Assembly: GCF_964213995.1 (NCBI RefSeq)
Contig: NC_135808.1
Location: forward strand, 50,468,001-50,532,000
Reading direction: 5' to 3'
Origin: Mustelus asterias
Lineage: Eukaryota
DNA: 64,000 nt
Shown here: positions 147-48,079 of the stretch, piece after piece
How positions within the stretch are numbered: the first letter of the stretch is position 1
Layout: every line of letters starts with the position of its first letter
Translations under genes and position numbers: made by a program
Notes under the pieces: generated by a model
Seen by the model: only the letters and a program-made list of their open reading frames with translations
Told to the model about the DNA's origin: nothing
The model's database searches: none

Positions 147-235
147 TTTATTACCTTTTACACATTGACATTGACAGAAAAAACAGCCCAGCCAGAGGAA
201 GCTGGAGAAATTCACAGGGAGAATGGAGGTTTATT
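147..235 (-). terminator. Two AATAAA polyadenylation signals 3' of C (cluster A)
   Basis: tttatt at 230-235 and 147-152, mirrored in cluster B. Confidence 0.6.
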
Positions 236-667: not shown

Positions 668-996
668 CTAGGCACATTCTGATCTACTGACGCTCTTGCT
701 GAGGGGCGAGGAGAGGCTGACGTGGGTGAGGGCACAGGAGAAGCGGGCGTTGGACTCCCAGTCGGAGCCAGAGAGGGTCAGCAGGCTGCTGACGCTGTAG
801 GTGTTGTCTGAAGCTCGCAGGTAGTTGCTGGTCTGAACCCCGTTGGAAATGGCTGCACCATCCTTCTTCCACTTCACCTCCACCTCATCGGGATAGAAGT
901 GATTGGCAAGGCACACCAGGGTGGCAGTGCCCTTGTTCTTGACCTCCTCCGGGGAGGGGGGCAGCAGGGTCAGCGTGGGTTGTGAATTCTCACGGG
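668..996 (-). CDS. IGKC: Ig light chain kappa-type (type III/NS4-like) constant exon, cluster A
   Basis: Acceptor tctttcag|CC, phase 1. Translates (T)RENSQPTLTLLPPSPEEVKNKGTATLVCLANHFYP...W...FSCALTH...RSECA*, a C1-set domain with both cysteines, the Trp and the penultimate inter-chain Cys. The ORF track start at 916 is not the real start. Confidence 0.96.
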
Positions 997-2399
997 CTGA
1001 AAGAGAAGAGAAGGAATTTTAATCACTGCCATTTTCAGGCTTTCAACTTCCCGAATATTGACTGGGATCAAATCAGTGTCAATGTTTCGATGTTGCAGAA
1101 TTCTGAAAATCCATTCCGGGGGAAATTTTTTAACCAGCACGGAACAATCCCAACAAGCGAAGGGGCAGTTTTGGGCAGTTTTATAGAATGAATCTCGGCA
1201 TGTGGAAGGTGTATCAGTGGGAGAGCATTTGGGTAATAGTGATCATAATACAGTTAGATTTAGAGTAGTTACGGAAAAGGGGAAAGATCGATCAAGAGTA
1301 AACGTTTTAAATTGGGAAAAGGCCAATTTCACGAAACTGGGATTTGCCAAAATGGAGAGGAAATAGCGACTTGAAGGTAAATCAGTGTCAGAGCAGTGGG
1401 AGGATATTCGAGCTGGAGATGGAGTTCAGAACAAATATGTTCACACAAAGCAATAGCGTGGGACATTGCAAGGAGGATAACTAAGGAATGAATAGGGCAG
1501 GTCAGAGAGCAACAAGGTAACTTGTGTGTGGAGGGAGAAGACACGGTGATGGTTCTTCATGAATAATTTACATCAGATATCACAAATGAGAGGGATAAAG
1601 CTAACATTGTAGTTCAGGAGGAGAGGGATTGTGAAATAATCAATGGGATAATGATAGTGTGGGAGGAGATATTAATGTGCTTATCATCTTTGAAAGTGGA
1701 AAAATTCCCAGGCCCGGGTGAAATGTATCCCAGGATGCGAAGGGAAGCACGGGAAGAAAAAGCAGAGACTCTGACCATTATTTTCCAATCCTCTCTGGCT
1801 ACAGGTGTGGTGTGGGAGGACTGGAGGACGGATAATGCTGTTTAAAATTACAGGCTGATGGGATTCAAGGGAAAGTGGCACGTTCGATTTCAAATTAGTT
1901 CAGTGTCTGGGGGTAAAGGTTTGATTTGAAGCTGGTTAAATCATTTTGCATATATAAAGAAAGTTACAACAAATTCAGCACTGAAATGGTTAATAATGAG
2001 AGTATTTAAAGACACAGTGTCCCTTTAAGAGACTGTTAACCAGTCAGGAAGCTGGAACTATTGTTCAGTCTGTCTGGGGGATACAGGTTGAGCATCAACA
2101 AACCTCAGATCACACACAGATCAGGAGAACTTTATCCCAGAACATTGCAGCAGACTTGGATCAACACACTTCACACAGCATTCTGATTGGCTGTCAGTGT
2201 AGAAGCTTCCAGATTTCATTTCAAACCTTACCCCCAGCACTTGGCTGAGGTCAAGGGTGAGGTTAGAATTAGTCTCAGTGTCCAGGGGTCAGACAGGGTC
2301 ACTGCTCCGAATGACCCCATGACCTCTGGAGGGTGTGAGTGTGTGGATAATGAGTGAGGGTTAGGATCAGGAATCTCCAACCTCAAAGACAGAATTACA

Positions 2400-2700
2400 T
2401 TTCTATAGCACCTGTCACCACCTCAGAATGTCCCAAAGTGTTTTACAGCTCATTGTGCACAGCAAGATCCCAGGGAGCAGAGTGAGAATGAACAGATAAG
2501 CAGATTTGTAGTGATGTTGATTGAGGGATAAATATTGACCAGTACATCGGGGTGAACTCCCCTGCTCTTCTTCCAAGGGTACCATGGAATCTTTCACACC
2601 CCCTGAGAGGACAGATATCAGTTTGTCTCATCTGAAAGACGGCACCTCTGACAGTGCAGCACTCGCTCAATACTGCACTGGATCTCAGCCTGGATGATGT
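2400..2700 (-). mobile_element. DeuSINE (SacSINE1-like) remnant
   Basis: Deu-domain-like gtctcatctgaaagacggcacctctgacagtgcagcact. Mostly absent at the mirror site in arm B. Confidence 0.6.
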
Positions 2701-3109
2701 GGGATTTGAGGTATCATTCTGTTTCTGTGGATTCTCTGCTGCTTTCAGTTGAATGAAGAGTGCAGGAGGACATGCCAGGAGCAACAGCAGACATACTGAA
2801 AAATGAGGAATGAGGCCACTTGGGGAGGGTGGAGCTGTTCCCCAGCCAGAGAGAGTGTCTTCAGGAGAGAGATGGAGAGCAGATTATGGGAAGCCTATAG
2901 TCTAGAGGGGGGACATTTAATCAGTCGCTGACAGGTGCTGAGCCCTTTCCCCATGAGGATTTTGGAAGTGGATGCGGAAAGTGGGAGGTGAACTAGAGAA
3001 ATGTCTTTGTTGCTGCTGAAACTCTTGCTATCTGCTCAGTCACATCTAATAAACACACAGACAAATCAGACAAACATCAGTCTGTTTCTGTGGATTCTCT
3101 GCTGCTTTC

Positions 3110-3960
3110 AGTTCAATGAAGAGTGCAGGAGGACACGGCAGGAGCAACAGCAGACATACTGAAAAATGAGATATTGACCTGGTGAAGCTACAACACAGGA
3201 CTGTGTGTCAAACAGCAGAAGCAGCAAGTGATAGACAGAGCTAAACCATCCCACAACTAATGGATCAGATCTAAGCTCTGCAGTCCTGCCACATCCAGCC
3301 GTGAATGGTGGGGGAAAATTAAACAACTCACTGGAGGAGGAGGCTCCACAAATATCCCCATCCTCAATGACGGAGGAACCCAGAACATCAGTGCAAAAGA
3401 TAAGGCTGAAGCACTTGCAGAAATCTTCAGCCAGAAGTGCCACGTGGATGATCCATCTCGACCTCCTCTGGAGGTCCTGAAGACGTGTGCTCCAGAACTT
3501 CCCGCGTCCCTAGCCAAGCTGTTCCAGTACATCTACAACACTGGCATCAACCCAACATTGTGATAAATTACCCGGTTATGAAATGTGCACAAAAACCAGG
3601 ACAAATCCAATCCGCACAATAACCGCCCCATCAGTCTACTCTCGATCATCAGCAATGTGATCTGAACATATCCAGAGCGATTACCAAGCAGCACTTACTC
3701 AGCAATAATCTGCTCACTGACACTCAGTTTGGGTTCCGCCAGGGTCACTCAGCTCCTGACCTCATTACAGCCTTGGTTCAAACATGGACAAAAGAGCTGA
3801 ACTCCAGAGGTGAGGTGAGAGTGACTGCCCTTGACATCAAGGCAGCATTTGACCGAGTGTGGCATCAAGGATCCCTCGCAAAACTGGAGCCCATGGGAAT
3901 CAGGGGAAAACTCTCCGCTCTTTGGAGTTATACCCAGCACAATGGAAGATGGTTGTTGTT
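3110..3960 (+). mobile_element. Non-LTR LINE fragment (same family as 34440-36950)
   Basis: VTALDIKAAFDRVWHQG reverse-transcriptase motif. Confidence 0.8.
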
Positions 3961-6460
3961 TGGGGTTTTATACTCTACAATCTATATTAATGAGCTGGAT
4001 GAAGGGAATGAGAGGAATGTCACTAAACGTGCTGATGATAAAATGAAAAGTAGAAATACAAGTTGTGAGGAGGATGCAGAGTCTGAAAAGGGATAGAGAT
4101 AGGTTCAGTGAGTGGGAAAACATTGACAGATGGAGTATAATGTGGGAAAATGTGAGGTTGTCCACTTTGGCAGGAGGATAGAGCAGAATACTAGTAAACT
4201 GGAGAGATTCTATCGAGTGATCTGGATGTCTTTCCATCCAGGAACAGCAATAAATTAGGAAGACAAATGGAATGTTGCTCTTCATTGCAATGAGGATGAG
4301 TATAAAAGTAGGGATGTTTTGCTGCAGCTGTACAGCACCTTGAGAAAATCACACCTGGAATATTGTGGACACTTTTGGTCTCCATACTTAAGGAAGGATA
4401 TAGTAGCATTGGAAAGAGTTCAGAGATGGTTCACGAGGCTGATTCCACTGAGTAATGGATTGTCTTATGAGGAAAGCTTGAGCAGGTTGGGCCGATACTC
4501 ATTGGAGTAGAACTTATTCCACCACCTCAGCACCAACTTCACCAGGGCAATTGGGGATGGGTGATAAATGCTGGTCTGCATAGAATCACAGAAAATAGGA
4601 ACAGGAGGAGGCCATTCGGCCCTTTGAGCCTGCTCCACTATTCATCATGATCATTTCTGATCATCCAATCAGTAGCCAGATCCTGTCTTCCCCCGCAAAT
4701 CCTTTGATCCCATTCACCCCAAGAGTTAAATCTAACTCCTTCTTGAAAACGTACAATATTTTGGCCTCAACTGCTTTCTGTGATAGTGAATTCCACAGGT
4801 TTACGCCTCTCTGGGTGAAGGAATTTCTCCTCACCTCAGTCCTAAAAGGTTTACCCCATATTCTCAGACTGTGACCCCTCAAACTGGACGCTCCCAGCAC
4901 TGGGAACATGCTTCCTGTATCTACCCTGTCTAGTCCTGTTGGAATTTTATTGATTTTTATGCGATCCCCCCTCATTCTTCTGAACTGCAGTGGGGGCAGC
5001 ACGGTGGCACAGTGGTTAGCACTGCTGCCTCACAGTGCCAGGGGGCTAGGTTCGATTCCCGGCTTGGGTCACTGTCTGTGTGGAGTTTGCACATTCTCCC
5101 CATGTCTGTGTGGGTTTCCTCCAGGTGTTAAGGTTTCCTCCCACAGTCCAAAAGGTGTGCAGGTTAGGTGAATTGGCCAAGCTAAAGTCTCCCTCAGTAT
5201 CCCCGAACAGGCGCCAGAATGTGGCCACATGGGGATTTTCACAGTGACTTCATTGCAGTGTAAATGTAAGCCTATTTGTGACTAATAAATAAACTTTAAA
5301 AAAAATATAATCTTAACCAACACAATCTCTCCTCCTACATCAATCCCACTATCGCAGAAATCATTCCAGTAAACCTTTGCTGCACTCCCTCTGTCGCAAA
5401 AACATCCTTCCTCAGATAAGGAGAGTAAAACTGTACACATTATTCCCAGTGTGGCCTCACCAAGGCCCTGTATTACTGCAGAAAGACAGAATTACGAGGG
5501 ACAGAGATAGGGTAGATATGAGGAAACTTTTCCCCTTAATCACAGAGGCAGCAGATTTTGAGGGACTTGAGGGAAATCTTTTCACCCAGAGGGTGCTGGG
5601 AATCTGGATCTCACTGCCTGAAAGGGTGGTGGAGGTGGGAACCCTCACAACATTTAAGAAGCATTTAGATGAGCGCTTGAAATTCCAAAGCAAACAAGGC
5701 AACGGACCAAATGCTGGAAAATGGGATTGGAATAGATAGGTGCTTGGTGGCCGGCACAGACATGGACAATAGAATCCCTGAAGTGCAGGCGGAGTCCATT
5801 CGGCCCATCGAGTCTGCATCGACTCTTACCCCATAACCCCATGTATTTACCTCACTAATCCCCCTCACCTGTTAGAATTTTATAGGTCTCCATGAGTTGC
5901 CTCCTTATTCCTCTGAACTCCGGTGAATATAAGTCTTAACCAACTCAATGTCTCCTCATTCATCAGTCCCATTATAACAGGAATCAGTTTGGGATACCTG
6001 CTCTGCACTCCCTCTGGAGCAAATATATCCTTCCTGAGATAGGGAGACCAAAACTGCGCACAATATTCCCAGTGCGGCCTCACCAAGGCCCTGTATAACT
6101 GCAGCAGGTCAGAATTATGAAGACATAGAGCAGATACGAAGAAACTTTTCCCCTTTTAGCAGCAGATTCAATAACCAGGGAGCATAGATTTAATCTCAGA
6201 AGCAGAAGATTTTGAGGGATTGGAGGAAAAACCTTTTCACTCAGAGGGTATTGGGAATCTGGAACTCACTGCCTGAAAGGGTGGGAGACACAGGAACCCT
6301 CACAACATTTAAGAAGTATTTAGATGAGCATTTGAAATTCCAAAGCATACAAGGCAACGGACCAAGTGCTGGAAAATGGGATTAGAATAGTTGGGTGCTT
6401 GAATGCCGGCAGAGACTGGATGGGCTGAAGAGCCTCTTTCTGTGATGTAAAACTCTTTGA
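3960..6460. mobile_element. Nested CR1/HER1-like LINE fragments on both strands
   Basis: HLEYC..FWSPYL.KD and FTQRVV..WNSLP motifs. Confidence 0.8.
4993..5295 (+). mobile_element. HE1-like tRNA-derived V-SINE
   Basis: ggcagcacggtggcacagtggttagcactgctgcctcacag head plus V-domain gtggagtttgcacattctccc. Confidence 0.85.
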
Positions 6461-7953
6461 CACTCTGACTGAGCCAAGATGGCCGAGAATGTAAAGTGAC
6501 CAGCTTCTGGAAAATTCCGATGTGGATTATATTTGACTGACCAGTCCCAAGACTAGTTGGAATGTCACACCTGAAGGGTGTCAGGGACTTCTTCAAACAG
6601 GAAATAGAAATGGAGATAGAAAAAATGCCGAAGACTGAAGTTTAATCTGCTGTGGTTACGGAAACAATGGAGACTTATTGTCACATCTCAGCAGACATCC
6701 AAAACCCATCTCCTGTTGAGTTATACCTCAGAATGTGGAAATAGTCTGAGTTCAAAGTAAACTGACTCGAGGGTGAAAGACATGTTTGTTTGTTACCTTT
6801 CAGGAAACAACAGGGAAATGAGTTAAAAATCCAACTGCACACCTGAGCTGTGTGTACTGGTGCGGGTGTGACAGAATGTGAGTTGAGACATTCCTCCGGA
6901 TGGTCCAGTTACCTCCCACAGTCCAAAGATCTGCAGGTTAGATGGATTGGCCATGCTAAATTACCCCTAGTGTGTCCTTTAGGTGGATTAGCAATGGTAA
7001 ATGCGCAGGGTTACAGGGATAGGGTGGGGAGCCTGGGGAAGAAGCTCTTTCAGAGAGTTGGTACAGATTCGATGGACTGAATCGCCTCCTTCTGCACTGT
7101 AGAGATTCAATGGCTAATAAAGGATTACGTGGACTGTGTAAGGTTTCCACGGGTGAAGGGATCCATTTTAAATGAACCTTGTTGTGACCAATCGAGGGCG
7201 GGGTTGAATAAGTCAGGGATCCAGCTGATTACTCCTCACCCAGGAGCAAAACAAAATTGGGATCCAGTTCAGGAAGTTAACAAATGAGGGACCTTGTCTG
7301 AGGACTGGTCACAACATGTACACAGCAAGATCCCACACACAGCAATGAGAACAATCAGCATTTTCAGTGATGTTGGATCCGGGATAAATATTGGACTGAA
7401 CTCGTCCCAAAGAGAAAGTAACTGAGAGTCTCCCCAAAAGCCTGGAACACTGAAGCCACTGGATTGTGAGCCCTGCTGTAGCTGTTTGTCATCAGAACTT
7501 TAGCAAGAGATAAGCAGGGAGTGGAGAGAGCAGAGTGAAAGCTGGGGGAGGTGGCACCTCGGTGTCTCACTGTGCTGGTGCTGTGATCAGTTATATCAGA
7601 GAGTGTGACAGGGAGTCCGACTTCACATCAAACTCTGCCTGTGTGTGTCACACTGAGACTGACAGGAGTCTAGAGAGTGATTTCACTCCATGCTGCAGGA
7701 ATGTGAGCACAGTCTGCAAACGTCCAGATCTCCTCCACACGGTGGGTAAAAGCTGCTTACTTATATCTTGCTGCTTAAAGGGGGGAATGGAAGGAAAGAA
7801 ATACAGCTGGGCTCCCTGTTCCACACAATGTTCTTCAATCAACCATTTCATTGACTGCAGCTCCCTCACCAACACCTTCAACTATTCAGCATTTGTGTTT
7901 GAGAAAGTTTCAGCATTGAAAGGGTTAATAACGGAGGATTGGGCTTTACTTAC

Positions 7954-7988
7954 TCAGTCTGAGTTTGGTTCCTTTACCGAACGTAAGG
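7954..7988 (-). CDS. IGKJ: Ig kappa-type J segment, cluster A (LTFGKGTKLRL)
   Basis: FGxG motif. Donor A|GTAAGT is phase 1 and matches the C exon. Confidence 0.96.
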
Positions 7989-8027
7989 CACACTGACAGC
8001 TTCCAGTGCAGGAGCTGTACAAAAACC
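7989..8027 (-). other. 23-bp-spacer RSS of J, cluster A
   Basis: CACACTG (7989-7995), 23 nt, ACAAAAACC (8019-8027). Confidence 0.95.
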
Positions 8028-8061
8028 TCTGCTCTCTGCCTCACTCACTCACTGACTCATC

Positions 8062-8375
8062 NNNNNNNNNNNNNNNNNNNNNNNNNNNNNNNNNNNNNNN
8101 NNNNNNNNNNNNNNNNNNNNNNNNNNNNNNNNNNNNNNNNNNNNNNNNNNNNNNNNNNNNNNNNNNNNNNNNNNNNNNNNNNNNNNNNNNNNNNNNNNNN
8201 NNNNNNNNNNNNNNNNNNNNNNNNNNNNNNNNNNNNNNNNNNNNNNNNNNNNNNNNNNNNNNNNNNNNNNNNNNNNNNNNNNNNNNNNNNNNNNNNNNNN
8301 NNNNNNNNNNNNNNNNNNNNNNNNNNNNNNNNNNNNNNNNNNNNNNNNNNNNNNNNNNNNNNNNNNNNNNNNNNN
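8062..8375. other. Assembly gap (314 N) in a GA/TC-type microsatellite between J and V
   Basis: N run. The mirror interval in arm B (40890-40979) is 90 bp of GA-rich repeat. Confidence 0.99.
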
Positions 8376-8550
8376 GTTTTGTCGGGAGAGTTGAGAATTC
8401 TAATTTGAGATGATGAATCTTTCAGCTGCTCTTCATATGTGGACATGGAGAGTAAGAGGGAAACTCGAGGCCTTCAGCGAGCGGTGGACACCACAGGGAC
8501 TGGAGTGTGTAGTGGACAGTGCAAATAATTTGTCCAGTTTCCTTTCTTGT

Positions 8551-9037
8551 CTTTATTATATATTATATAAAACTGTGGGATGTGTCAGTACAGGAGGTGG
8601 GACTGTGTGTCCATTATTATATATTATATAAAACTGTGGGATGTGTCAGTACAGGAGGTGGGACTGTGTGTCCATTATTATATATTATATAAAACTGTGG
8701 GATGTGTCAGTACAGGAGGTGGGACTGTGTGTCCATTATTATATATTATATAAAACTGTGGGATGTGTCAGTACAGGAGGTGGGACTGTGTGTCCATTAT
8801 TATATATTATATAAAACTGTGGGATGTGTCAGTACAGGAGGTGGGACTGTGTGTCCATTATTATATATTATATAAAACTGTGGGATGTGTCAGTACAGGA
8901 GGTGGGACTGTGTGTCCATTATTATATATTATATAAAACTGTGGGATGTGTCAGTACAGGAGGTGGGACTGTGTGTCCATTATTATATATTATATTAAAC
9001 TGTGGGATGTGTCAGTACAGGAGGTGGTGCTGTGTGT
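8551..9037. repeat. 61-bp minisatellite (~8 copies) in the V-J interval of cluster A
   Basis: Unit ctgtgggatgtgtcagtacaggaggtgggactgtgtgtccattattatatattatataaaa, near-perfect copies. Confidence 0.95.
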
Positions 9038-9042
9038 GTTGG

Positions 9043-9070
9043 GGTTTTTGTAAGGCTCTGTATCACTGTG
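9043..9070 (-). other. 12-bp-spacer RSS of V, cluster A (consensus)
   Basis: Minus strand reads CACAGTG, 12 nt, ACAAAAACC. V-12/J-23 is the kappa configuration. Confidence 0.97.
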
Positions 9071-9369
9071 TAGAGGGTAGCTGCTATATTGCTGACAGTA
9101 ATAATCAGCGACATCCTCATTCTGTACATTGCTGATTGTCAGGGTGAATCTTGTCCCAGATCCACTGCCGGTGAATCGGTCGGATATTCCTGTGAATCGA
9201 GTTGCTGCATTATAGATCAGCAGAGCCGGTTTCTGTCCTTCTCGCTGTTGGTACCAACTCACGTAACTGCTAACAGATTGACTGGCCGTACAGGTGATGG
9301 TGGCGGTCTGGCCCAGGCTCACTGACAGCACCGGGGGAGACTGGGTCATGATGATGTCTCCACTGATAC
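9071..9369 (-). CDS. IGKV: Ig kappa-type V exon, germline (unjoined), cluster A
   Basis: Acceptor ccctcag|GT. Open frame [27 protein letters not shown]...[10 protein letters not shown]...GSGSGT...[15 protein letters not shown] ends at the heptamer. Confidence 0.97.
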
Positions 9370-9555
9370 CTGAGGGGTAATAGAGAAACAGAGTGAAGTA
9401 AGAACTGTCACAGAAAGACGCTGTACAATGAGATATTGTTGGAGACACTGACTGTTCCTCTCCTTTCAGCATTTTCCCTTCAATCACAAGTCAGGAGAAT
9501 TGGATTGAAATGGAGAGCAGGAAAATATTCAAGGTGGAAGGAGAGAGATTTGTAC

Positions 9556-9604
9556 CTGCGATGCAGAATGCCAGAGGCCAGAGCAGCTGGATGGCTGAAA
9601 TCAT
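9556..9604 (-). CDS. IGKV: Leader exon, cluster A (MISAIQLLWPLAFCIA-G)
   Basis: ACCATG start, 49 nt, CAG|GTAC donor, phase 1 in frame with the V exon. Confidence 0.93.
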
Positions 9605-9659
9605 GGTGTGTGGTCGTGTCCCTGTGCCTGGTTACTGATAAACTCTCCCTTCACTGGGC

Positions 9660-9760
9660 TCTGCTTTATAAAGCTGCAGCCTGTCAGAGTCTCACTGCCT
9701 GTTCCTCAGTTTGTAAATGGTCTGACCCAGAGAAACCACGTCAGCACCTTTCACTTCCTC
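9660..9760 (-). promoter_or_regulatory. V promoter, cluster A: TATA, degenerate octamer, TGACGTGG, Ets-IRF composite
   Basis: TATAAA 9665-9670, ATTTACAA (6/8 match to ATTTGCAT), TGACGTGG, GGAAGTGAAA 9749-9758. Confidence 0.65.
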
Positions 9761-9959
9761 TTCTTCTCTCTCCCTCCCTCAGTCTCTGTCTCTCTCACTC
9801 TCTCTGTATCTGTCCATCAGTCTCTGCCCCTCTCTGTCTGTCTCCCTGTCATTCTCTCCTTGCCTTGCACCATTTCTGCTATCTCTCTTTCCCTACCGCT
9901 CTTTCCGTCTCTCTTCGTCTCTCTCTCTCTTTCTCGGTTGTCCCTCTGTCTATTCATTT

Positions 9960-10880: not shown

Positions 10881-10914
10881 ACAATCACACATTTAGCATA
10901 AAGAAACTGCTCCT

Positions 10915-11210: not shown

Positions 11211-11243
11211 GCTTTTACTTTACATCCACCATGGTGTCCATGT

Positions 11244-22380: not shown

Positions 22381-22384
22381 GTAA

Positions 22385-25047: not shown

Positions 25048-25049
25048 TG

Positions 25050-38459: not shown

Positions 38460-39780
38460 CATGGACACCATGGTCGATGTGGAGCAGTTTCTTTATGTTA
38501 TAAATGTGTGATTGTTCACTTTTGAGGAATTCACAAAGTGGGTGAAGGGAACTTGTAGATGTGATATTTAGGGAATTCCAAAAGGTATTTGATAAATTGC
38601 CACATCAAATCTTGCTACACAAGATACAAGCTGATGGTGTGTGGGTAACATATTAGCATTAATAGAGGATTGGTTAGCGAACAGAGACCAGAGAGAGGGG
38701 TAAATGATTGTTTTGGGGTTGGGAAGCTGTAATTAGTGGAATTCTGGAACAATCAGTGCTGGGACCACAACTATTCACAATCCAGATCAATGACTTGGAT
38801 GAAGGGAGTGAATGGAGCTGATGTCCCAATGACAGCAGCATGGTCAGTGCAGGCTTAGAGGGTCGAAGGGCCTGTTCCTGTGCTGTAATTTTCTTTGTTT
38901 TTTGACACTAAGATAGTTGGGGAAAGTAAGTTATCAAGAGGAGATAGAGAGTCTGCAAACAGATGGAAACAAGGGAAGTGAGTGGCTAAACATTTGGAAT
39001 ATAACTGCGTAAATGTGAAGGTGTCCACTTTGGCAGGAAGAATAGAACAGCAGGAAACTATTGAAATGGAGAGAGATTGCACAACTCGGTGCTACAGAGG
39101 GATCTGGCTGTCCTGGGACATGAATCACAACAAGTTAGTCTGCAGCTACAGCAAGTGATTAGGAAGACAAATGGAATGTTGGTGTTTATTACAAGGAGAA
39201 TGGAATATAAAAATAGGGAAGTTTTACTGCAGCTGTACAGTGTCTCGGTGAGACCACATCTGGAATACTGTACATTTTGGTCTCCTTATTTGGAAAAGGA
39301 TATCATTGTGTTCGAAGCAGTTCAGAGAAGATTCACCCGACACATTCCTGGGGTGAGGGGTTATCTTATGAAGAAAAGTTGGACAGGCTGGGCCTGAACC
39401 CATTGGAGTTTAGAAGAATGAGAGGTGATCTTATTGAAACATATCAGGTTGTGAGGGGACTGACAGAGTGGATACCAGGAGGGTGGTGTCTCTTCTGGGG
39501 CAGAGTGAGATGAGTGGACAGATGGATAGAAGTGCTGGAGAGAAAGTGATGGAGAAGGAGAGCTGAACTGAGGAAGAGAGAGGGAGAGAATGATAAGAGA
39601 GAAAGAATGAGTGAAGGAGAGGGCAAAGAAGGAGAATAAGACAGGAACAACAAGAGAGAGAGACCGAGAGAGGGGGAACAGAGAGAGGGGGAACAGAGAA
39701 GGGTGAATAGAGAGAGCGGGAGCAGAGACTGAGGGACAGAGACTGAGGGACAGAGACTGAGGGAGGGAGAGAGAAGAAGA

Positions 39781-39880
39781 GGAAGTGAAAGGTGCTGACG
39801 TGGTTTCTCTGGGTCAGACCATTTACAAACTGAGGAACAGGCAGTGAGACTCTGACAGGCTGCAGCTTTATAAAGCAGAG
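39781..39880 (+). promoter_or_regulatory. V promoter, cluster B (mirror of cluster A promoter)
   Basis: GGAAGTGAAA 39781-39790, TGACGTGG 39796-39803, ATTTACAA 39821-39828, TATAAA 39869-39874. Confidence 0.65.
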
Positions 39881-39934
39881 CCCAGTGAAGGGAGAGTTTA
39901 TCAGTAACCAGGCACAGGGACACGACCACACACC

Positions 39935-39983
39935 ATGATTTCAGCCATCCAGCTGCTCTGGCCTCAGGCATTCTGCATCGCAG
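39935..39983 (+). CDS. Leader exon, cluster B (MISAIQLLWPQAFCIA-G); orphan, V exon deleted
   Basis: Mirror of 9556-9604 with one CTG>CAG (L>Q) change; ATG and GT donor intact. Confidence 0.9.
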
Positions 39984-40116
39984 GTACAAATCTCTCTCCT
40001 TCCACCTTGAATATTTTCCTGCTCTCCATTTCAATCCAATTCTCCTGACTTGTGATTGAAGGGAAAATGCTGAAAGGAGAGGAACAGTCAGTGTCTCCAA
40101 CAATATCTCATTGTAC
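39984..40116 (+). pseudogene. Truncated leader-V intron ending at the V-deletion junction, cluster B
   Basis: Matches the A intron up to ...tcattgtac, then runs directly into cacctcctgtactgac of the 61-bp repeat. Acceptor, V exon and 12-RSS are absent. Confidence 0.92.
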
Positions 40117-40713
40117 CACCTCCTGTACTGACACATCCCACAGTTTTATATAATATATAATAATGGACACACAGTCCCACCTCCTGTACTGACACATCCC
40201 ACAGTTTTATATAATATATAATAATGGACACACAGTCCCACCTCCTGTACTGACACATCCCACAGTTTTATATAATATATAATAATGGACACACAGTCCC
40301 ACCTCCTGTACTGACACATCCCACAGTTTTATATAATATATAATAATGGACACACAGTCCCACCTCCTGTACTGACACATCCCACAGTTTTATATAATAT
40401 ATAATAATGGACACACAGTCCCACCTCCTGTACTGACACATCCCACAGTTTTATATAATATATAATAATGGACACACAGTCCCACCTCCTGTACTGACAC
40501 ATCCCACAGTTTTATATAATATATAATAATGGACACACAGCACCACCTCCTGTACTGACACATCCCACAGTTTTATATAATATATAATAATGGACACACA
40601 GTCCCACCTCCTGTACTGACACATCCCACAGTTTTATATAATATATAATAAAGGACACACAGTCCCACCTCCTGTACTGACACATCCCACAGTTTTATAT
40701 AATATATAATAAA
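40115..40713. repeat. 61-bp minisatellite (~10 copies), cluster B
   Basis: Inverted copy of the 8551-9037 array. Confidence 0.95.
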
Positions 40714-41013
40714 GACAAGAAAGGAAACTGGACAAATTATTTGCACTGTCCACTACACACTCCAGTCCCTGTGGTGTCCACCGCTCGCTGAAGGCCTCGA
40801 GTTTCCCTCTTACTCTCCATGTCCACATATGAAGAGCAGCTGAAAGATTTATCATCTCAAATTAGAATTCTCAACTCTCCCGACAAAACACTGAGACATT
40901 GAGAGAAACAGAGAGAGAGAAACAGAGAGAGAGAAAGAGTGAGAGAGAAAGAGTGAGAGAGAAAGAGTGAGAGAGAAGAGATGAGTGAGTGAGTGAGTGA
41001 GGCAGAGAGCAGA

Positions 41014-41052
41014 GGTTTTTGTACAGCTCCTGCACTGGAAGCTGTCAGTGTG
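41014..41052 (+). other. 23-bp-spacer RSS of J, cluster B
   Basis: GGTTTTTGT (41014-41022), 23 nt, CAGTGTG (41046-41052); identical to cluster A. Confidence 0.95.
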
Positions 41053-41087
41053 CCTTACGTTCGGTAAAGGAACCAAACTCAGACTGA
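41053..41087 (+). CDS. IGKJ: Ig kappa-type J segment, cluster B (LTFGKGTKLRL)
   Basis: Identical to J of cluster A; GTAAGT donor at 41088. Confidence 0.96.
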
Positions 41088-41929
41088 GTAAGTAAAGCCC
41101 AATCCTCCGTTATTAACCCTTTCAATGCTGAAACTTTCTCAAACACAAATGCTGAATAGTTGAAGGTGTTGGTGAGGAAGCTGCAGTCAATGAAATGGTT
41201 GATTGAAGAACATTGTGTGGAACAGGGAGCCCAGCTGTATTTCTTTCCTTCCATTTCCCCCTTTAAGCAGCAAGATATAAGTAAGCAGCTTTTACCCACC
41301 GTGTGGAGGAGATCTGGACGTTTGCAGACTGTGCTCACATTCCTGCAGCATGGAGTGAAATCACTCTCTAGACTCCTGTCAGTCTCAGTGTGACACACAC
41401 AGGCAGAGTTTGATGTGAAGTCGGACTCCCTGTCACACTCTCTGGTATAACTGATCACAGCACCAGCACAGTGAGACACCGAGGTGCCACCTCCCCCAGC
41501 TTTCACTCTGCTCTCTCCACTCCCTGCTTATCTCTTGCTAAAGTTCTGATGACAAACAGCTACAGCAGGGCCCACAATCCAGTGGCTTCAGTGTTCCAGG
41601 CTTTTGGGGAGACTCTCAGTTACTTTCTCTTTGGGACGAGTTCAGTCCGATATTTATCCCGGATCCAACATCACTGAAAATGCTGATTGTTCTCATTGCT
41701 GTGTGTGGGATCTTGCTGTGTACACGTTGTGACCAATCCTCAGACAAGGTCCCTCATTTGTTAACTTCCTGAACCCGATCCCAATTTTGTTTTGCTCCTG
41801 GGTGAGGAGTAATCAGCTGGATCCCTGACTTTATTCAACCCCGCCCTCGATTGGTCACAACAAGGTTCATTTAAAATGGATCCCTTCACCCGTGGAAACC
41901 TTACACAGTCCACGTAATCCTTTATTCGC

Positions 41930-42265
41930 CTTTGAATCTCTACAGTGCAGAAGGAGGCTGTTCAGTCCATCGAATCTGTACCAACTCTCTGAAAGAGCTT
42001 CTTACCCAGGCTCCCCACCCTATCCCTGTAACCCTGCGCATTTACCATTGCTAATCCACTTAAAGAACACACTCGGGGCATTTTAGCATGGCCAATCCAT
42101 CTAACCTGTATTGAATTTTGGGAGGAAACTGGAGCACTCGGAGGAAACCTACACAGACATCAGGTTAACATGCAAACTCTACACAGGCAGTGACCCGAGG
42201 CCTGAATTGAACCCAGGTCCCTGGCTGTGAGGCGGCAGTGCTAATCACTGTGTCAACATGCCGCC
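41930..42265 (-). mobile_element. HE1-like SINE (partial mirror at ~6890-7110)
   Basis: SINE head and V-domain. Confidence 0.75.
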
Positions 42266-42389
42266 GCTCTTTTAATTTTTTAGAAGGAATTATTTTAACC
42301 AGGTTTTCTTGAATACGTTTATTAGTTACTAAATACCTGAGAAAATAATCAACATGTGAAACGCACACACTCTCGCACTGACTAGAAAT

Positions 42390-45300
42390 GAAAAGTATGA
42401 GGAGAGGTTGACTAGGTTAGGATTGTTTTCGCTGGAGTTCAGACGAATGAGGGGGTATCTCATAGAGACTTATAAAATTCTAGCGGGATGAGACAGGATA
42501 GATACAGGGAGGATGTTCCCGATGTTGGAGAGTCCAGAACCAGTCGCAGTCTGAGGATTCAGGCTAGACCATTTAGGATGGAGGTGAGGAGACATTTCTT
42601 CACCCAAAAAGTGGTGAGCCTGTGGAATTCATTGCCACAGGAAGCAGTTGATGCCAAAACATTGAATGTATTCAGGAGGCGGCTAGATATAGCACTTGGG
42701 GTGAATGGGATCTAAAGTTATGGGGAAAAGGCAGAATTAGGCTATTGAGTTGGATGATCAGCCATAATCGTAATGAATAGTGGAGCAGGCTCAAAGGGCC
42801 AAATGGCCTCCTCCTGCTCCTATCTTCTGTGTTTCTGTGTCTATGTTTCTACGTTTTCATAATTCTGTCTTGCTGCAGTTATACAGGGCCTTGGTGAGGC
42901 CACACTGGGAATATTGTGCACAGTTTTGTTCTCCTTATCTGAGGAAGGATGTTCTTGCTCTACATGGAGCGCAGACCAGGTTTACCAGACTGATTCCTGC
43001 GATAGTGGGACTGACGTATGAGGAGAGATTGAATTAGTTAAAGTTTATATTCACTGGAGTTCAGAAGAATGAGGGGGGAACTCAGAGAAACCTATAAAGC
43101 TCTAAAAGGTTCGGGGGATTAGTGAGGTAAATACATGGGGTTATGGGGTAAGAGTCGATGCAGACTCGATTGACCAAATGGACTCCGCCTGCACTTTAGG
43201 GATTCTATTGTCCATGTCTGTGCCGGCCACCAAGCACCTATCTATTCCAATCCCATTTTCCAGCCCTTGGTCCGTTGCCTTGTTTGCTTTGGAATTTATC
43301 TAAATGCATCTTAAATGTTGTGAGGGTTCCCACCTCCACCACCCTTTCAGGCAGTGAGTTCCAGATTCCCAACACCCTCTGGGTGAAAAGATTTCCCTCA
43401 AGACTCTCAAAATCTGCTGCCTCTATAATGAAGGGAAATGGTTCCTCGTATCTGTCTTGCTGCAGTTATAGTAAGATGTCGATATGCGCGATCTCCTTGG
43501 AGATTCTCTCCACTTGGAGCCCCAGTTGCGGTGTCGATGGTAGCCATGATATGGAGATGCCGGCGTTGGACTGGGGTGTCCAATGCCGGCATCGCCACAT
43601 CATCGCTGCAGTTATCCAGGGCCTTGGTGAGGCCACACTGGGAATATTGTTTGCAGTTTTGGTCTCCTTATTTGAGGAAGGATGTTTTTGCAACGGAGGG
43701 AGCACAGCAAAGGTTTACCAGACTGATTCCCGGGATAATGGACTGATGTAGGAGGAGAGATTGTTTTGGTTAAGATCATATTTGCTGCAGTTCAGAAGGA
43801 TGAGGGGAATCACATAGAAACCTATAAAATTGTAACAGGACTAGACATGGTAGTTGCAGGAAGGATGTTCCCAATGGTGGGATTGTCCGTGGTGGGTTCC
43901 GTGGTGGGTTCCAGGGGTCACAGTCTGAGGATACGGAGTAAACCTTTTAGGACTGAGGTGAGGAGAAATTCCTTCACCCAGAGAGGCGTAAACCTGTGGA
44001 ATTCACTACCACAGAAAGCAGTTGAGGCTAAAATATTGTATGTTTTCAAGAAGGAGTTAGATTTAGGTCTTGGGGTGAATGGGATCAAAGGATTTAGAGG
44101 TAAAGCAGGATCTGGATACTGATTGGATAATCAGCCATGATCATGGTGAATAATGGGGCAGGCATGAAGGGCTGAGTGGCCTCCTCCATCTCCTATTTTC
44201 TGTGATTCTATGCAGACCAGCATTTATTACCCATCCCTAATTGCCCTGGTGAAGATGGTGCTGAGGTGGTGGAATAAGTTCTACTCCAATGAGTATTGGC
44301 CCAACCTGCTCAAGCTTTCCTCATAAGACAATCCATTACTCAGTGGAATCAGCCTCGTGAATCTTCTCTGAACTCTTTCCAATGCTACTATATCCTTACT
44401 TGGGAATGGAGACCAAAAGTGTCCACAATATTCCAGGTGTGATCTTCCCAACGTGCTGTACAGCTGGAGTAAGACATCCCTACTTCTATACTCATCCTCA
44501 TTGGAATGAAGAACAACATTCCATTTGCCTTCCTAATTTTTTGCTGTTCCTGGATGCAAAGACACACAGATCACTCGATAGAATCTCTCCAGTTTACTAG
44601 TATTCTGCTCTATCCTCTTGCCAAAGTGGACAACCTCACAATTTCCCACATTATACTCCATCAGTCAATGTTTTCCCACTCACTGAATCTACCTCTATCC
44701 CTTTTCAGACTCTGTATTCACCTCACAACTTGCTTTCCTACTAATCATTTTACCATCAGCAAATTTAGCGACAATCCTCTCATTCCCTTCATCCAGCTCA
44801 TTAATATAGATTGTAGAGTTAAACCCCAAACAACAACCATCTTCCTATGTGCTGGGTATAACTCCAGCCAGCACAGAGTTTTCCCCCCTGATTCCCATTG
44901 ACTCCAGTTTTGCATGGACTCCTTGATGCCACACTTGGTCAAATCCTGCCTTGATGTCAAGGGCAGTCACTCTCACCTCACCTTTGGAGTTCAGCTCTTT
45001 TGTCCACGTTTGAACCATCTGGGAAAAAGCTTCCCACCGTTCACCCTATCTGTGCCTTTCATAATTTTATACACCTCTATTAGGTCACCCCTCATCCTCC
45101 GTCTTTCCAGTGAGAACAACCCCAGTTTACCCAATCTCTCCTCATAACTAAGCCCTTCCATACCAGGCAACATCCTGGTAAACCTCCTCTGCACTCTCTC
45201 TAAAGCCTCCATGTCCTTCTGGTAGTGTGTGGTGACCAGAACTGGGCGCAGTATTACAAATGCGGCCAAACCAACATTCTATACAACTGCAACATCAGAT

Positions 45301-45690
45301 CCCAACTTTTATACTCTATGCCCCGTCCTATAAAGGCAAGCATGCCATATGCCTTATTCACTACCTTCTCCACCTGTGACGTCACCTTCTAGGATCTGTG
45401 GACTTGCACACCCAGGTCCCTCTGCATATCTACACCCTTTATGGTTCTGCCATTTATCATATAGCTCCCCCCTACGTTAGTTCTACCAAAATGCATCACT
45501 TCGCATTTATCTGGATTGAACTCCATCTGCCATTTCTTTGCCCAAATTTCCAGCCTATCTATATCCTTCTGTAGCCTCTGACAATGTTCCTCACTATCTG
45601 CAAGTCCAGCCATTTTCGTGTCGTCCGCAAACTTACTGATCACCCCAGTTACACCTTCTTCCAGATCATTTATATCAATCACAAACAGCA
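42390..45690. mobile_element. Nested CR1 and second-family LINE fragments in the J-C intron of cluster B
   Basis: RT motifs on both strands; 45015-45690 CR1 is specific to arm B. Confidence 0.8.
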
Positions 45691-47750
45691 GTAACAGCAA
45701 TAACATTGTGAATAATCAAGATTAGACTGATGGGATGGTTATTGTGTGGATTGGATTTGTCCTGTTTGATGTGGACAATTCATAACCAGGCAATTTTCCA
45801 CATTGCCGGGTTGATGCCAGTGTTGTACCTGCACTGGAACAGCTTGGCTCGGGGCATGGAATGTTCTGGAGCACTAGTCTGCAGGACTTCCGGAGGAGGT
45901 CGAGCTGGATCATCTACTCGGCACTTCCGGCTAAAGATTACTGTGAATGCTTCAACCTTATCTTTTGTACTGATGGGCTGGGCTCCTCCATCATTGAGGA
46001 TGGGGATATTTGTGTTGCCTCCTCCTCCAGTGAGTTGTTTAATTGTCCACCACCATTCACTGGATATGGCAGGACTGCAGAGCTTTGATCTGATCCATTG
46101 GTTGTGGGATGGTTTAGCTCTGTCTATCACTTGCTGCTTCTGCTGTTTGACACACAGTCCTGTGTTGTAGCTTCACCAGGTTAACACCTCATTTTTCAGT
46201 ACATCTGCTGTTGCTCCTGCCATGTCCTCCTGCACTCTTCATTGAACTGAAAGCAGCAGAGAATCCACAGAAACGGAATGATGCTTCAAATCCCACTCCT
46301 GAGATGGTGGTGGCAGATGCTATACAAATGTATTTCTGTCTTCGAGCTTGTGGATTCCTGATCCTTGCCCATTGTCCACACACTCGCAGCCTCCAGGGTT
46401 CATGGGGGCTTTTGGAACAGTGACCCTGACTGATCCCCGGACACTGGGACTAATTCTAGCCTCACCCTTAAACTCAGCCAAGTGCTGTGCGGTAAGGTTT
46501 GCAATGAAATCTAGAAGCTTCTACACTGACAGCCAATCAGAATCCTGTGTGAACTGTGTTGATCCAAGTCTGCTGCAATGTTCTGGGATAAAGTTCTCCT
46601 GATCTGTGTGTGATCTGTGGTTTGTTGATGCTCAACCTGTTTCCCCCAGACAGACTGAACAATAGTTCCAGCTTCCTGACTGGTTAACAGTCTCTTAAAG
46701 GGACACTGTGTCTTTAAATACTCTCACTATTAACCATTTCAGTGCTGAATTTGTAGTAACCTTCTTTACAAATGTTTCAGTAACATTGCAAAATGATTCA
46801 ACCAGCTTCAAATCAAACCTTTACCCCCAGACACTGAACTACTTTGAAATCCAACTTGTCACTTTCCCTCGGACCCCATCAGCTTTTAATTTTAAACAAT
46901 GGTACAGCATTATCCGTCCTCCAGTCCTCCCACACCACACCTGTAGCCAGAGAGGATTGGGAAATAATGGTCAGAGTCTCTGCTTTTTCTTCCCTTGCTT
47001 CCCTTCGCATCCTGGGATACATTTCACCTGGGCTTGGGAATTTTTCCACTTTCAAAGATGATAAGAACATTAATATCTCCTCCCACACTATCATTATCCC
47101 ATTAATTATTTCACAATCTCTCTCCTCCTGAAGTACAATGTCAGCTTTGTCCCTCTCATTTGTGATATCGAATGTAAATTATTCGTTCAGAACCATCTCT
47201 GTGCCTTCCCCCTCCACACACAAGTTACCTTGTTGCTCTCTAATCAGCCCTATTCATTCCTTAGTTATCCTCTTTGCAATGTCCCACGCTATTGCTTTGT
47301 TTGAACATATTTGTTCTGAACTCTATCTCCAGCTCGAATATCCTCCCACTGCTCTGACACTGATTTACCTTCAAGTCGCTGTTTCCGGTTCATTTTGCCA
47401 AATTCCAGTTGAGTGAAATTGGCCTTTCCCCAAGTTAAAACATTTACCCTTGATCGATCTTTCCTCTTTTCCATAGCTACTCGAAATCGTTAACTTTATG
47501 ATGATCATTATTACCCAAATGTTCCCCCACTCATACACCTTCCAGCTACCCAGATTTGTTCTCTAAAATTACCCAAAACTGCCCCTTCTCTTGTTGGGAT
47601 TGTTCCGTACTGGTTAAAAAATTTCCCTGGAATAGATTTTCGGAATTGTGCAATGTTGAAACATTGACACTGATTTGATCCCAGTCAATATTCGGGAAGT
47701 TGAAAACCCTGAAAATGGCAGTGATTAAAATTCCTTCTCTTCTCTTTCAG

Positions 47751-48079
47751 CCCGTGAGAATTCACAACCCACGCTGACCCTGCTGCCCCCCTCCCCGGAG
47801 GAGGTCAAGACCAAGGGCACTGCCACCCTGGTGTGCCTTGCCAATCACTTCTATCCCGATGAGGTGGAGGTGAAGTGGAAGAAGGACGGTGCAGCCATTT
47901 CCAACGGGATTCAGACCAGCAACTACCTGCGAGCTTCAGACAACACCTACAGCGTCAGCAGCCTGCTGACCCTCTCTGGCTCCGACTGGGAGTCCAACGC
48001 CCGCTTCTCCTGTGCCCTCACCCACGTCAGCCTCTCCTCGCCCCTCAGCAAGAGCGTCAGGAGATCAGAATGTGCCTAG
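47751..48079 (+). CDS. IGKC: Ig kappa-type constant exon, cluster B, intact
   Basis: Acceptor tctttcag|CC and open to TAG. Differs from C-A by N>T, V>I, S>R and one silent change. Confidence 0.96.

What the first reader, a model, noticed from the sequence alone, without database searches (positions are those of the whole stretch)
668..48079. One V, two J-C: palindromic Ig-kappa pair that allows inversional joining between clusters
Seen: the only V (9071-9369, minus, consensus 12-RSS) faces J-A. A second J with an identical 23-RSS, an intact donor and an intact C lies in the opposite orientation and has no V of its own. Known: the 12/23 rule allows inversional V-J joining, which is common at mammalian kappa, whereas elasmobranch Ig clusters are generally described as rearranging within a cluster. 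Inference: V-A can join J-A by a ~1-kb deletion or J-B by a 32-kb inversion (9071..41052). The inversion would give a complete L-V-J-C(B) gene, retain the signal joint and turn the orphan leader toward J-A/C-A. This would be a RAG-driven choice of C and a miniature translocon-like unit built from two clusters.
Basis: partly seen in the sequence, partly recalled or inferred. Interest (0 to 1): 0.85.

Follow-up and report, generated by a model that had tools for sequence, protein, structure and literature searches.

The report
Mirror-image shark kappa clusters, one V-less
Two mirror-image copies of a shark antibody light-chain gene cluster lie head to head, and one has lost its variable segment through a small deletion; joining the surviving variable segment to the orphan copy by flipping 32 kb of DNA is geometrically allowed, but nothing here shows that it happens.

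Summary
The window carries one shark Ig-kappa V (9369-9071, minus strand) with a perfect 12-RSS. It also carries two identical J segments, each with the same 23-RSS (one heptamer mismatch), and two intact C exons that differ at 4 of 329 bases.

The two clusters are the arms of a diverged inverted duplication: 1-18806 against 48798-34039, 80-100% identity, with many indels. Arm B keeps its promoter, leader exon and 133 nt of leader intron. It lacks 396 bp that arm A has (intron end, V exon, RSS), and the junction shows 2-nt microhomology.

- Nothing shows that this inversion is used.
- From the promoter to 1 kb past J the arms differ by about 0.75%, so the V loss is young. The intactness of J-B and C-B is therefore not evidence of selection.
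- The proposed C-B marker residues are not specific. T and R are ancestral, and B-type letters occur in C contigs of other shark samples (two expression-like, two DNA-like).

Most likely arm B is a recently crippled cluster, and any inversion is a minor by-product. First-reader notes place the same architecture and two more V-less clusters elsewhere in this genome; these notes are unchecked.

The parts
1..18806 (-). Arm A of the inverted duplication. It runs off the window start and contains the complete kappa minicluster A.
   Evidence: Self-blastn on the minus strand, rows of 200 nt or more: collinear blocks from 1-468/48798-48331 to 18040-18806/34795-34039, 80-99% identity. The repeat finder reported 55 inverted pairs.
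9605..9803 (-). Promoter and 5' UTR of V-A.
   Evidence: 195 of 197 aligned bases are identical to arm B 39738-39934. A TATA-like run lies upstream of the ATG (read by eye).
9556..9604 (-). Leader exon A (16 codons plus 1 base; GT donor).
   Evidence: Translation MISAIQLLWPLAFCIA. It matches the leaders of shark kappa models P0003, P0008 and P0011.
9071..9369 (-). V-A exon, the only V in the window.
   Evidence: Open frame of 99 codons. Pfam V-set E 3.3e-18. 90% identical to a Scyliorhinus torazame kappa chain. Single tblastn hit, E 5e-64.
9043..9070 (-). 12-RSS of V-A (heptamer 9070-9064, spacer 12, nonamer 9051-9043).
   Evidence: 0 mismatches to the consensus pattern.
8553..9037 (-). 61-bp tandem array, 8.0 copies, in the V-J spacer of arm A.
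   Evidence: Tandem Repeats Finder, 99% matches.
8062..8375 (.). Assembly gap (314 N) inside the V-J spacer of arm A.
   Evidence: The only N run in the window. The flanks are collinear with arm B.
7989..8027 (-). 23-RSS of J-A.
   Evidence: 1 mismatch to the consensus; identical to the arm-B copy.
7954..7988 (-). J-A exon (FGKG motif; GT donor follows).
   Evidence: Sequence. 42 of 42 bases (heptamer plus J) are identical to arm B.
668..996 (-). C-A exon including the stop codon.
   Evidence: Open frame of 108 residues. C1-set E 8.1e-24.
18807..34038 (.). Central spacer between the arms. It holds retroelement fragments and a 54-bp array, with no Ig segment.
   Evidence: No mirror partner. No V or C hit. 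RT-like ORFs.
34039..48798 (+). Arm B of the inverted duplication, containing the V-less cluster B.
39935..39983 (+). Orphan leader exon B.
   Evidence: Translation MISAIQLLWPQAFCIA. There is one difference from leader A, at 39966. The Q is derived: L in 3 of 3 outgroup models.
40116..40117 (+). Deletion junction. The leader intron (its first 133 nt) is fused to the first unit of the 61-bp array. 396 bp of arm A (9422..9027: intron end, V exon, 12-RSS and 16 nt) have no counterpart.
   Evidence: Sequence. Junction contexts with 2-nt microhomology. Block ends 9423/40116.
40116..40712 (+). 61-bp tandem array, 9.8 copies.
41014..41052 (+). 23-RSS of J-B.
41053..41087 (+). J-B exon.
   Evidence: The last 22 letters equal the loose-end consensus of RNA-like contigs spliced to the C exon at 47751.
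47751..48079 (+). C-B exon including the stop codon.
   Evidence: C1-set E 2.2e-23. The acceptor at 47751 is used in contigs of runs X2 and X7.

Best explanation
The region is a diverged head-to-head inverted duplication of a shark Ig-kappa (type III / NS4-like) minicluster.

**Arm A** is an ordinary, complete cluster. V-A joins J-A by a short deletion of about 1 kb (the exact length is hidden by the gap). The product is spliced L-V-J to C-A.

**Arm B** is a copy whose L-V-J module was recently homogenised with arm A, or with a third cluster. It then lost the intron end, the V exon and the 12-RSS in one 396-bp microhomology-flanked deletion, so it cannot rearrange on its own.

**Status of J-B and C-B.** The J-B 23-RSS, the J donor and C-B are still intact simply because little time has passed. 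J-B is therefore a legitimate RAG target, and V-A to J-B inversion is permitted. I expect that inversion to be at most a minor, unselected by-product, because J-A carries the same RSS about 30 times closer to V-A and in deletional orientation.

**Shown:** the anatomy, the geometry, the age pattern, and the use of the J|C splice site in related samples. **Inferred:** the order of events and the rarity of the inversion.
For: - **Anatomy and RSSs:**
- **Real paralogous arms:** identity runs from 80 to 100% in a mosaic, with 75 indel events in the J-C intron alone.
- **Recent homogenisation:** 5 mismatches in 664 bases (0.75%) from promoter to J. The far upstream region is 92.4% identical and the rest of the J-C intron 89.3%.
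- **The deletion postdates that event:** both of its flanks are equally near-identical (left 3 mismatches in 379 bases, right 2 in 285).
- **The breakpoints are not RAG-type:** they lie in mid-intron and 16 nt beyond the nonamer, with 2-nt microhomology.
- **C exon divergence fits the young tract:** 4 differences in 329 bases (1.2%). C-B has one derived, conservative change (V to I); C-A has two.
- **Leader B** carries a derived L to Q change in the hydrophobic core.
- **The kind is known:** defective and pseudogene clusters are on record among nurse-shark NS4 genes (passages).
Against: - Nothing measured the frequency of V-A to J-B joining, so 'minor by-product' is inference.
- The arm-B promoter is 99% identical to arm A, so J-B could be an open recombination centre without a partner in cis.
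- Mouse Igk shows that strong RSSs support inversional joining over long distances (abstract), and the V-A RSS is a perfect consensus.
- First-reader notes (unchecked) report two more V-less clusters and a second pair with the same 32-kb geometry in this locus. That could mean the V-less form is maintained.
- C-B shows no sign of decay.
Confidence: 0.6

Rival explanations
1. The pair works as a two-C unit: V-A regularly joins either J-A (by deletion) or J-B (by a 32-kb inversion). This gives a RAG-driven choice of constant region, and the V-less J-C module is kept for that purpose.
For: - The geometry and the 12/23 rule are exactly met.
- The J-B RSS, J donor, C-B and the arm-B promoter are intact.
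- Inter-cluster inversional IgL joining exists in zebrafish (passages), and inversional joining with strong RSSs occurs in mouse Igk (abstract).
- V-less clusters are said to recur in this locus (unchecked notes).
Against: - There is no joint, transcript or signal joint linking V-A to arm B.
- The intactness of arm B is expected under neutrality at 0.75% divergence.
- C-A and C-B differ by three residues only, so a 'choice' would have little to act on.
- J-A, with the same RSS, is about 30 times closer to V-A.
- After the inversion arm A becomes the V-less one, so no extra rearrangement capacity is gained (reasoned from the coordinates).
Confidence: 0.17
2. An assembly or haplotype effect. The V-less state of arm B, or the linkage of V-A to J-A across the gap, is not the true germline arrangement. 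The cause could be a collapsed or mis-joined near-identical 3-kb tract, or a deletion present on one haplotype only.
For: - The 3-kb tract around the junction is 99-100% identical between the arms.
- Arm A is broken by an N gap of estimated length at exactly the homologous position of a low-complexity run in arm B.
- No run from the source individual was found: the best share of words was 0.69 and all runs were contigs. The junction was therefore not checked against reads.
Against: - Arm B is gap-free from the divergent upstream region (92%) through the junction to the divergent intron (89%), so it is anchored on both sides.
- The arms as a whole are far too different to be one locus assembled twice.
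- Other V-less clusters were noted elsewhere in the genome (unchecked).
Confidence: 0.08
3. Arm B is used without rearrangement. Its promoter and leader drive leader-C (or sterile J-C) transcripts, giving a V-less free C-kappa product.
For: - The leader donor and the C acceptor are both phase 1, so a leader-C splice would stay in frame (read by eye).
- The promoter is 99% identical to that of arm A.
Against: - Every loose end listed at the C acceptor 47751 in the RNA-like contigs continued into J, not into a leader (3 contigs in X2 and 1 in X7). The caveats are that 14 loose-end rows were not shown, that contigs drop rare forms, and that the samples are not this individual.
- Leader B has a derived Q in its hydrophobic core.
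- The in-frame property holds for any Ig gene and is not special to arm B.
Confidence: 0.05

Closest known systems
Nurse-shark NS4 / horned-shark type III (kappa) light-chain miniclusters (Lee et al. 2000, PMC2193156; passages read)
   Same: - One leader-V, one J and one C per cluster, all in one orientation.
- V carries a 12-RSS and J a 23-RSS.
- The leader intron is 186 bp, exactly as reported for split NS4 genes.
- Members are closely similar to one another, and some are defective.
- The V is 81-90% identical to shark kappa chains.
   Different: - The V-J spacer is about 1 kb and is filled by a 61-bp array; NS4 spacers are about 500 bp.
- Two clusters lie head to head about 30 kb apart as the arms of one inverted duplication.
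- The defect is the clean loss of the V plus its RSS. The defects reported for NS4 are stop codons, bad splice signals or germline joining.
Zebrafish IgL inter-cluster inversional V-J joining (Zimmerman et al. 2008, PMC3014032; passages read)
   Same: - (V-J-C) clusters on one chromosome with V and J-C in opposite polarity.
- 12-RSS on V and 23-RSS on J.
- An inversion would keep the intervening DNA.
   Different: - In zebrafish the joints were shown by VJ-C cDNA fitted to sequenced BACs. Here nothing shows the joint.
- The zebrafish paper itself states that shark IgL segments are in the same orientation and that inter-cluster joining may be absent in sharks.
Mouse Igk inversional V-to-J joining (Li et al. 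2026, PMC13190342; abstract read)
   Same: - Strong consensus RSSs.
- V segments in inversional orientation relative to J.
- The signal joint is retained on the chromosome.
   Different: - Mouse Igk is a translocon with more than 100 V segments, one C and dedicated CTCF elements.
- Here there is one V with its own J 1 kb away and a second, orphan J-C 32 kb away.
Germline-joined shark light-chain genes (RAG activity in germ cells; PMC2193156)
   Same: Both are a heritable structural change of a cluster in the V-J region.
   Different: - Germline joining fuses V to J and removes both RSSs and the spacer.
- Arm B keeps the spacer array and the J RSS and has lost the V itself.
- The breakpoints are not at the RSS borders.

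Membership tests
Cartilaginous-fish Ig kappa (type III / NS4) minicluster | V-set domain exon preceded by a split leader, and a C1-set constant exon | tested here: met
   Pfam V-set 3.3e-18; C1-set 8.1e-24 and 2.2e-23. Leader exons translated. Arm B has no V exon.
Cartilaginous-fish Ig kappa (type III / NS4) minicluster | One V, one J and one C in the same transcriptional orientation within about 10 kb | tested here: met
   Arm A: 9604 down to 668 on the minus strand. Arm B meets this only for leader, J and C.
Cartilaginous-fish Ig kappa (type III / NS4) minicluster | Kappa-type signals: 12-RSS on V and 23-RSS on J | tested here: met
Cartilaginous-fish Ig kappa (type III / NS4) minicluster | Closest relatives are shark kappa chains | tested here: met
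   80 proteins at E of 0.001 or less among 146 candidates. The best identities are 90% (Scyliorhinus torazame) and 89% (Cetorhinus maximus), both named kappa light chain-like.
Cartilaginous-fish Ig kappa (type III / NS4) minicluster | Somatic V-J joining and expression of this particular cluster | tested here: inconclusive
   RNA-like contigs of other samples splice J to the C acceptor at 47751, and one 738-nt contig continues 286 nt upstream of the C exon. None is from this individual, and none is cluster-specific.
Inter-cluster inversional IgL rearrangement (zebrafish type) | The V of one cluster and the J-C of another lie in opposite polarity on one chromosome, with compatible RSSs of equal polarity | tested here: met
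   Coordinates. The inversion segment is 9071..41052, 31,982 nt.
Inter-cluster inversional IgL rearrangement (zebrafish type) | Coding joints, VJ-C transcripts or retained signal joints that link the two clusters | tested here: inconclusive
   All runs found were contigs from other samples or organisms. J is identical in both arms, and the C markers are not unique.
Defective (pseudogene) Ig cluster | Loss of an element needed for autonomous rearrangement or expression | tested here: met
   The V exon, its acceptor and the 12-RSS are absent from arm B.
Defective (pseudogene) Ig cluster | Further decay of the remaining exons and signals | tested here: not met
   The J, its RSS, the donor and the C-B frame are intact. 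Only leader B has a derived L to Q change. At 0.75% divergence no decay is expected yet.
Germline-joined (RAG in germ cells) shark IgL gene | V fused to J at the RSS borders, with loss of both RSSs and the spacer | tested here: not met
   Arm B keeps the spacer and the J RSS. The breakpoints lie in mid-intron and 16 nt past the nonamer.
False inverted duplication (assembly artefact) | Arms near-identical throughout, as for one locus assembled twice | tested here: not met
   Identity of 80-99% in a mosaic, with many indels including 259-363-nt ones.

The most novel reading that the evidence does not exclude
Shark kappa loci are not sets of isolated miniclusters. Closely spaced clusters of alternating orientation would exchange segments, and V-less J-C modules (three noted in this locus) would be kept as acceptor modules that neighbouring V segments reach by RAG-mediated inversion. 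That would be the first inter-cluster V-J joining in a cartilaginous fish, and a living intermediate between cluster and translocon organisation.
Probability: 0.12. Interest if true: 0.8.

Novelty: new variant of a known kind. Interest (0 to 1): 0.4.

Why it matters
Reviews state that shark Ig segments share one orientation, that clusters lie far apart, and that joining occurs only within a cluster (passages; 'usually').

This window shows two kappa clusters head to head about 30 kb apart, with RSSs that would allow joining between them. One cluster could be used only in that way. This does not overturn the rule. It does turn the rule into a simple experiment, because arm-specific differences begin 91 nt 3' of J.

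If inter-cluster joints were found, the origin of translocon loci and of light-chain editing would need to be revisited. If none is found, the pair is an ordinary example of birth-and-death and concerted evolution in a multigene family.

Tried and rejected
**RNA and DNA read test of C-B use**
- The look-up of sequencing runs on 47751-48250 listed 24 runs, all kept as contigs. The best share of words was 0.69, and several coded organisms were involved. No run looked like the source individual.
- I laid 4 of those 24 runs (X1, X2, X3, X7) on 46300-48800.
- This confirmed the C acceptor and the J|C splice, but it could not assign transcripts to arm B.

**Comparative genomic context in other sharks**

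**RAG-made origin of the deletion**
- Rejected, because the breakpoints are not at the heptamer borders.

**Selection on C-B**
- Four differences are too few for any rate test. I only polarised them with 5 outgroup sequences.

**Literature**
- Seven searches found no description of head-to-head or V-less kappa clusters in a cartilaginous fish, and none of inter-cluster IgL joining there.
- This is a statement about those searches only.
- Hsu and Criscitiello 2006 (J Immunol) is not held.
- Supplements are closed. Table S1 of PMC12227049 lists IgL coordinates in four elasmobranch assemblies and may already show such arrangements.

**Short C-only gene models**
- The C-exon protein search returned 3 proteins at E of 1e-20 or less among 17 candidates. 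None was a leader-C model.

Full report
**What is there**

The window is part of a shark Ig-kappa locus. The V exon translation is 90% identical to a kappa light chain-like model of Scyliorhinus torazame and 89% identical to models of Cetorhinus maximus. The search returned 80 proteins at E of 0.001 or less among 146 candidates, and no protein of the window's own genome was in the database.

On the minus strand lies a complete minicluster, arm A:
- leader exon 9604-9556
- a 186-nt intron
- V exon 9369-9071
- a 12-RSS at 9070-9043 with no mismatch to the consensus
- a 61-bp array of 8.0 copies at 8553-9037
- the N gap at 8062-8375
- a 23-RSS at 8027-7989 with one heptamer mismatch
- J-A at 7988-7954 with a GT donor
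- C-A at 996-668

The 186-nt leader intron equals the figure given for split nurse-shark NS4 genes (passages). Pfam calls the V exon V-set and both C exons C1-set.

On the plus strand lies arm B:
- a promoter region
- leader exon 39935-39983
- 133 nt of leader intron
- then, directly, the 61-bp array (40116-40712, 9.8 copies)
- a low-complexity run
- the same 23-RSS at 41014-41052
- J-B at 41053-41087
- C-B at 47751-48079

A tblastn of the V and C translations against the window found one V and two C. All other hits had E of 0.39 or more.

**The gap**

The 314 N lie in the non-coding V-J spacer of arm A, so no reading frame depends on them. The sequence on both sides is collinear with arm B: 8376-9037 with 40889-40228, and 6891-8061 with 42146-40980. 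This is what continuity predicts, but it does not prove it. The homologous flanks in arm B are 90 bases apart, so the written V-A to J-A distance of 1082 nt is uncertain by a few hundred bases.

**The pair is a large, old inverted duplication with a young core**

Mirror blocks run from 1-468/48798-48331 inwards to 18040-18806/34795-34039. They leave a central spacer of about 15 kb made of retroelement fragments. Arm A runs off the window start.

Identity between the arms is a mosaic:

| Segment | Identity |
|---|---|
| Far upstream | 92.4% |
| Promoter and 5' UTR | 195 of 197 |
| Leader exon | 48 of 49 |
| Retained leader intron | 133 of 133 |
| Spacer between array and gap | 176 of 177 |
| J RSS region | 65 of 66 |
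| Heptamer plus J | 42 of 42 |
| First 1 kb of the J-C intron | 97.5% |
| Rest of the J-C intron | 89.3%, 75 indel events |
| C exon | 325 of 329 |
| 3' flank | 96.4% |

Arms this different cannot be one locus assembled twice. The near-identical 3-kb core points to a recent homogenisation of the L-V-J module by gene conversion, as expected for a multigene family evolving in concert. This last step is inference.

**How arm B lost its V**

Relative to arm A, 396 bp are missing: 9422..9027, comprising the last 53 nt of the intron, the 299-nt V exon, the 28-nt RSS and 16 nt beyond it. The junction shows a 2-nt microhomology.

The breakpoints are not at the heptamer borders. The spacer and the J RSS are retained. 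This is therefore not the RAG-type germline joining described for NS4 genes but an ordinary small deletion.

Both flanks of the deletion belong to the 0.75% tract (5 mismatches in 664 bases), so the loss is younger than the homogenisation. For scale, Lee et al. date their closest NS4 gene pair to 7 million years and report identities of up to 99% (passages). The V loss is thus probably a few million years old at most. This is a rough inference.

**Does the intactness of J-B and C-B mean anything?**

It does not yet. At 0.75% neutral divergence about 2.5 differences are expected in the 329-nt C exon, and 4 are seen (3 replacements, 1 silent).

Polarising with five outgroup sequences (P0081, P0082, P0003, P0011, P0008) gives:
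- T at residue 20 and R at residue 103, as in C-B, are ancestral (5 of 5).
- V at residue 53, as in C-A, is ancestral (5 of 5).
- C-A therefore has two derived replacements, and C-B has one, which is conservative.

Leader B has a derived L to Q change in the hydrophobic core; L is found in 3 of 3 outgroup models. None of this separates 'maintained' from 'too young to have decayed'.

**Read evidence**

No run from the source individual was found. The 24 runs listed are all stored as contigs, the best holds 0.69 of the sampled words, and they come from several coded organisms. I laid four of them on 46300-48800.

- **X2** behaves like RNA. The exon bins have a word depth of 600-1300 and the intron bins have almost none. 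Three of its contigs carry a loose end before 47751 whose 22-letter consensus equals the end of the J exon. This confirms the predicted acceptor and the phase of the J|C splice.
- **X7** has a 738-nt contig whose positions 287-738 lie on 47751-48202. Its preceding 286 nt run on through a J that differs from the window's J by one silent base, so it is a V-J-C message from another cluster or species (9 other letters).
- **P0081**, a V-J-C fragment filed under a bacterial name and 96-97% identical to C-A and C-B, shows the same junction residue.

At the four sites that separate C-A from C-B:

| Run (contig) | 47811 | 47887 | 47909 | 48061 |
|---|---|---|---|---|
| X2, main contig 47759-48060 (2 other letters, both elsewhere) | B-type | B-type | B-type | A-type letter at 1237.7 of 1360.5 depth |
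| X7 | not certain (2 of its 9 differences not listed) | B-type | B-type | B-type |
| X3, DNA-like (29 of 30 bins covered), contig 47708-48027 | B-type | A-type | A-type | A-type letter at 42.3 of 180.7 depth |
| X1 | not certain (4 of its 14 differences not listed) | B-type | B-type | A-type |

The residues proposed as diagnostic for C-B therefore occur in mosaic combinations in other clusters or species. Contigs show presence only; they say nothing about absence or level.

**How it most likely works**

Arm A rearranges in the usual way for a shark cluster. Arm B cannot rearrange alone.

Because its promoter is intact, J-B may well be accessible to RAG. The V-A RSS is a perfect consensus. Work on mouse Igk shows that strong RSSs allow inversional joining (abstract). 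So V-A to J-B joining by a 31,982-nt inversion is mechanistically allowed.

Several points argue against it being more than a by-product:
- J-A has the identical RSS, lies about 30 times closer, and is in deletional orientation.
- The inversion merely moves the V from one arm to the other. Arm A then becomes V-less, with leader B facing J-A, so no further rearrangement capacity is gained.
- The two C regions differ by three residues.

I put 0.6 on 'recently crippled cluster, inversion at most a minor unselected by-product'.

**Comparison with what is known**

- The unit is a member of the shark kappa (type III/NS4) minicluster family by every feature that I could test.
- It resembles the zebrafish inter-cluster inversion system in geometry only. 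The defining evidence for that system, joints that link clusters, is missing.
- Reviews and primary papers say that shark rearrangement occurs within clusters and that segments share one orientation (passages).
- Seven literature searches found no account of head-to-head or V-less kappa clusters in cartilaginous fish.
- Hsu and Criscitiello 2006 was not held, and supplements, including table S1 of PMC12227049, were closed.

**Earlier notes of this scan**

First readers noted the following in the same genome:
- another head-to-head pair with an orphan J and a '~32-kb inversion'
- two further V-less clusters
- alternating orientation of kappa clusters 25-30 kb apart

None of these notes has been followed up, and I could not read those places. 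They are leads. If the junctions are the same, the V-less form has been copied. If V-less modules prove to be conserved, the novel reading gains weight.

**Verdict**

This is a real and accurately described structure. The geometric inference is correct, but the functional claim is untested and its proposed markers are unsuitable. It is a new variant of a known kind, of moderate interest, mainly because it makes the 'no inter-cluster joining in sharks' rule directly testable.

Noticed in passing
window 32883-33654: A 54-bp tandem array of 14.3 copies in the central spacer. Every consensus unit ends in a perfect J-side RSS heptamer. No nonamer partner was checked.
   Followed up: no
window 8553-9037 and 40116-40712: The 61-bp array starts 5 nt (arm A) after the V nonamer and fills the V-J spacer: 8.0 copies in arm A and 9.8 in arm B. 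Each unit holds heptamer-like CAC motifs. Gene models of Scyliorhinus and Cetorhinus that read through the V RSS suggest that the sequence just after the nonamer is conserved across shark orders (by eye).
   Followed up: partly
proteins P0081 and P0082: Two rearranged shark kappa V-J-C fragments are filed in public databases as proteins of Aeromonas veronii and Salmonella enterica. They are evidently host contamination in bacterial assemblies. P0081 is 96-97% identical to the window's C regions.
   Followed up: partly
window 39935-39983 with 47751-48079: The orphan leader exon and the C-B exon are both phase 1, so a direct leader-C splice would be in frame. Among the loose ends listed at 47751 in the contigs laid, none showed a leader (14 loose-end rows across the stretch were not shown).
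   Followed up: partly
window 11243-11618 and 38087-38455: Mirror-image 44-bp tandem arrays of about 8.5 copies inside the two arms, next to reverse-transcriptase-like ORFs.
   Followed up: no
window 48232-48400: A short element of very high copy number in all four runs laid, with word depth up to several hundred thousand. It is probably a SINE-like repeat just 3' of the C exon.
   Followed up: no
window 57878-61544: Overlapping long ORFs on the plus strand. One of them, 58765-59826, matched Pfam RVT_1. Together they look like a fairly intact LTR-type retroelement; the gag-like and integrase-like parts were judged by eye only. RT-like ORFs, probably LINE fragments, also lie at 11619-12677, 15179-16243 (RVT_1), 20176-21102 and 54520-55533; the other three were judged from their translations only.
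   Followed up: partly
window 8062-8375 against 40890-40979: The only assembly gap sits exactly where the other arm has a purine-rich low-complexity run. This kind of sequence often breaks long-read contigs (inference from general knowledge).
   Followed up: no
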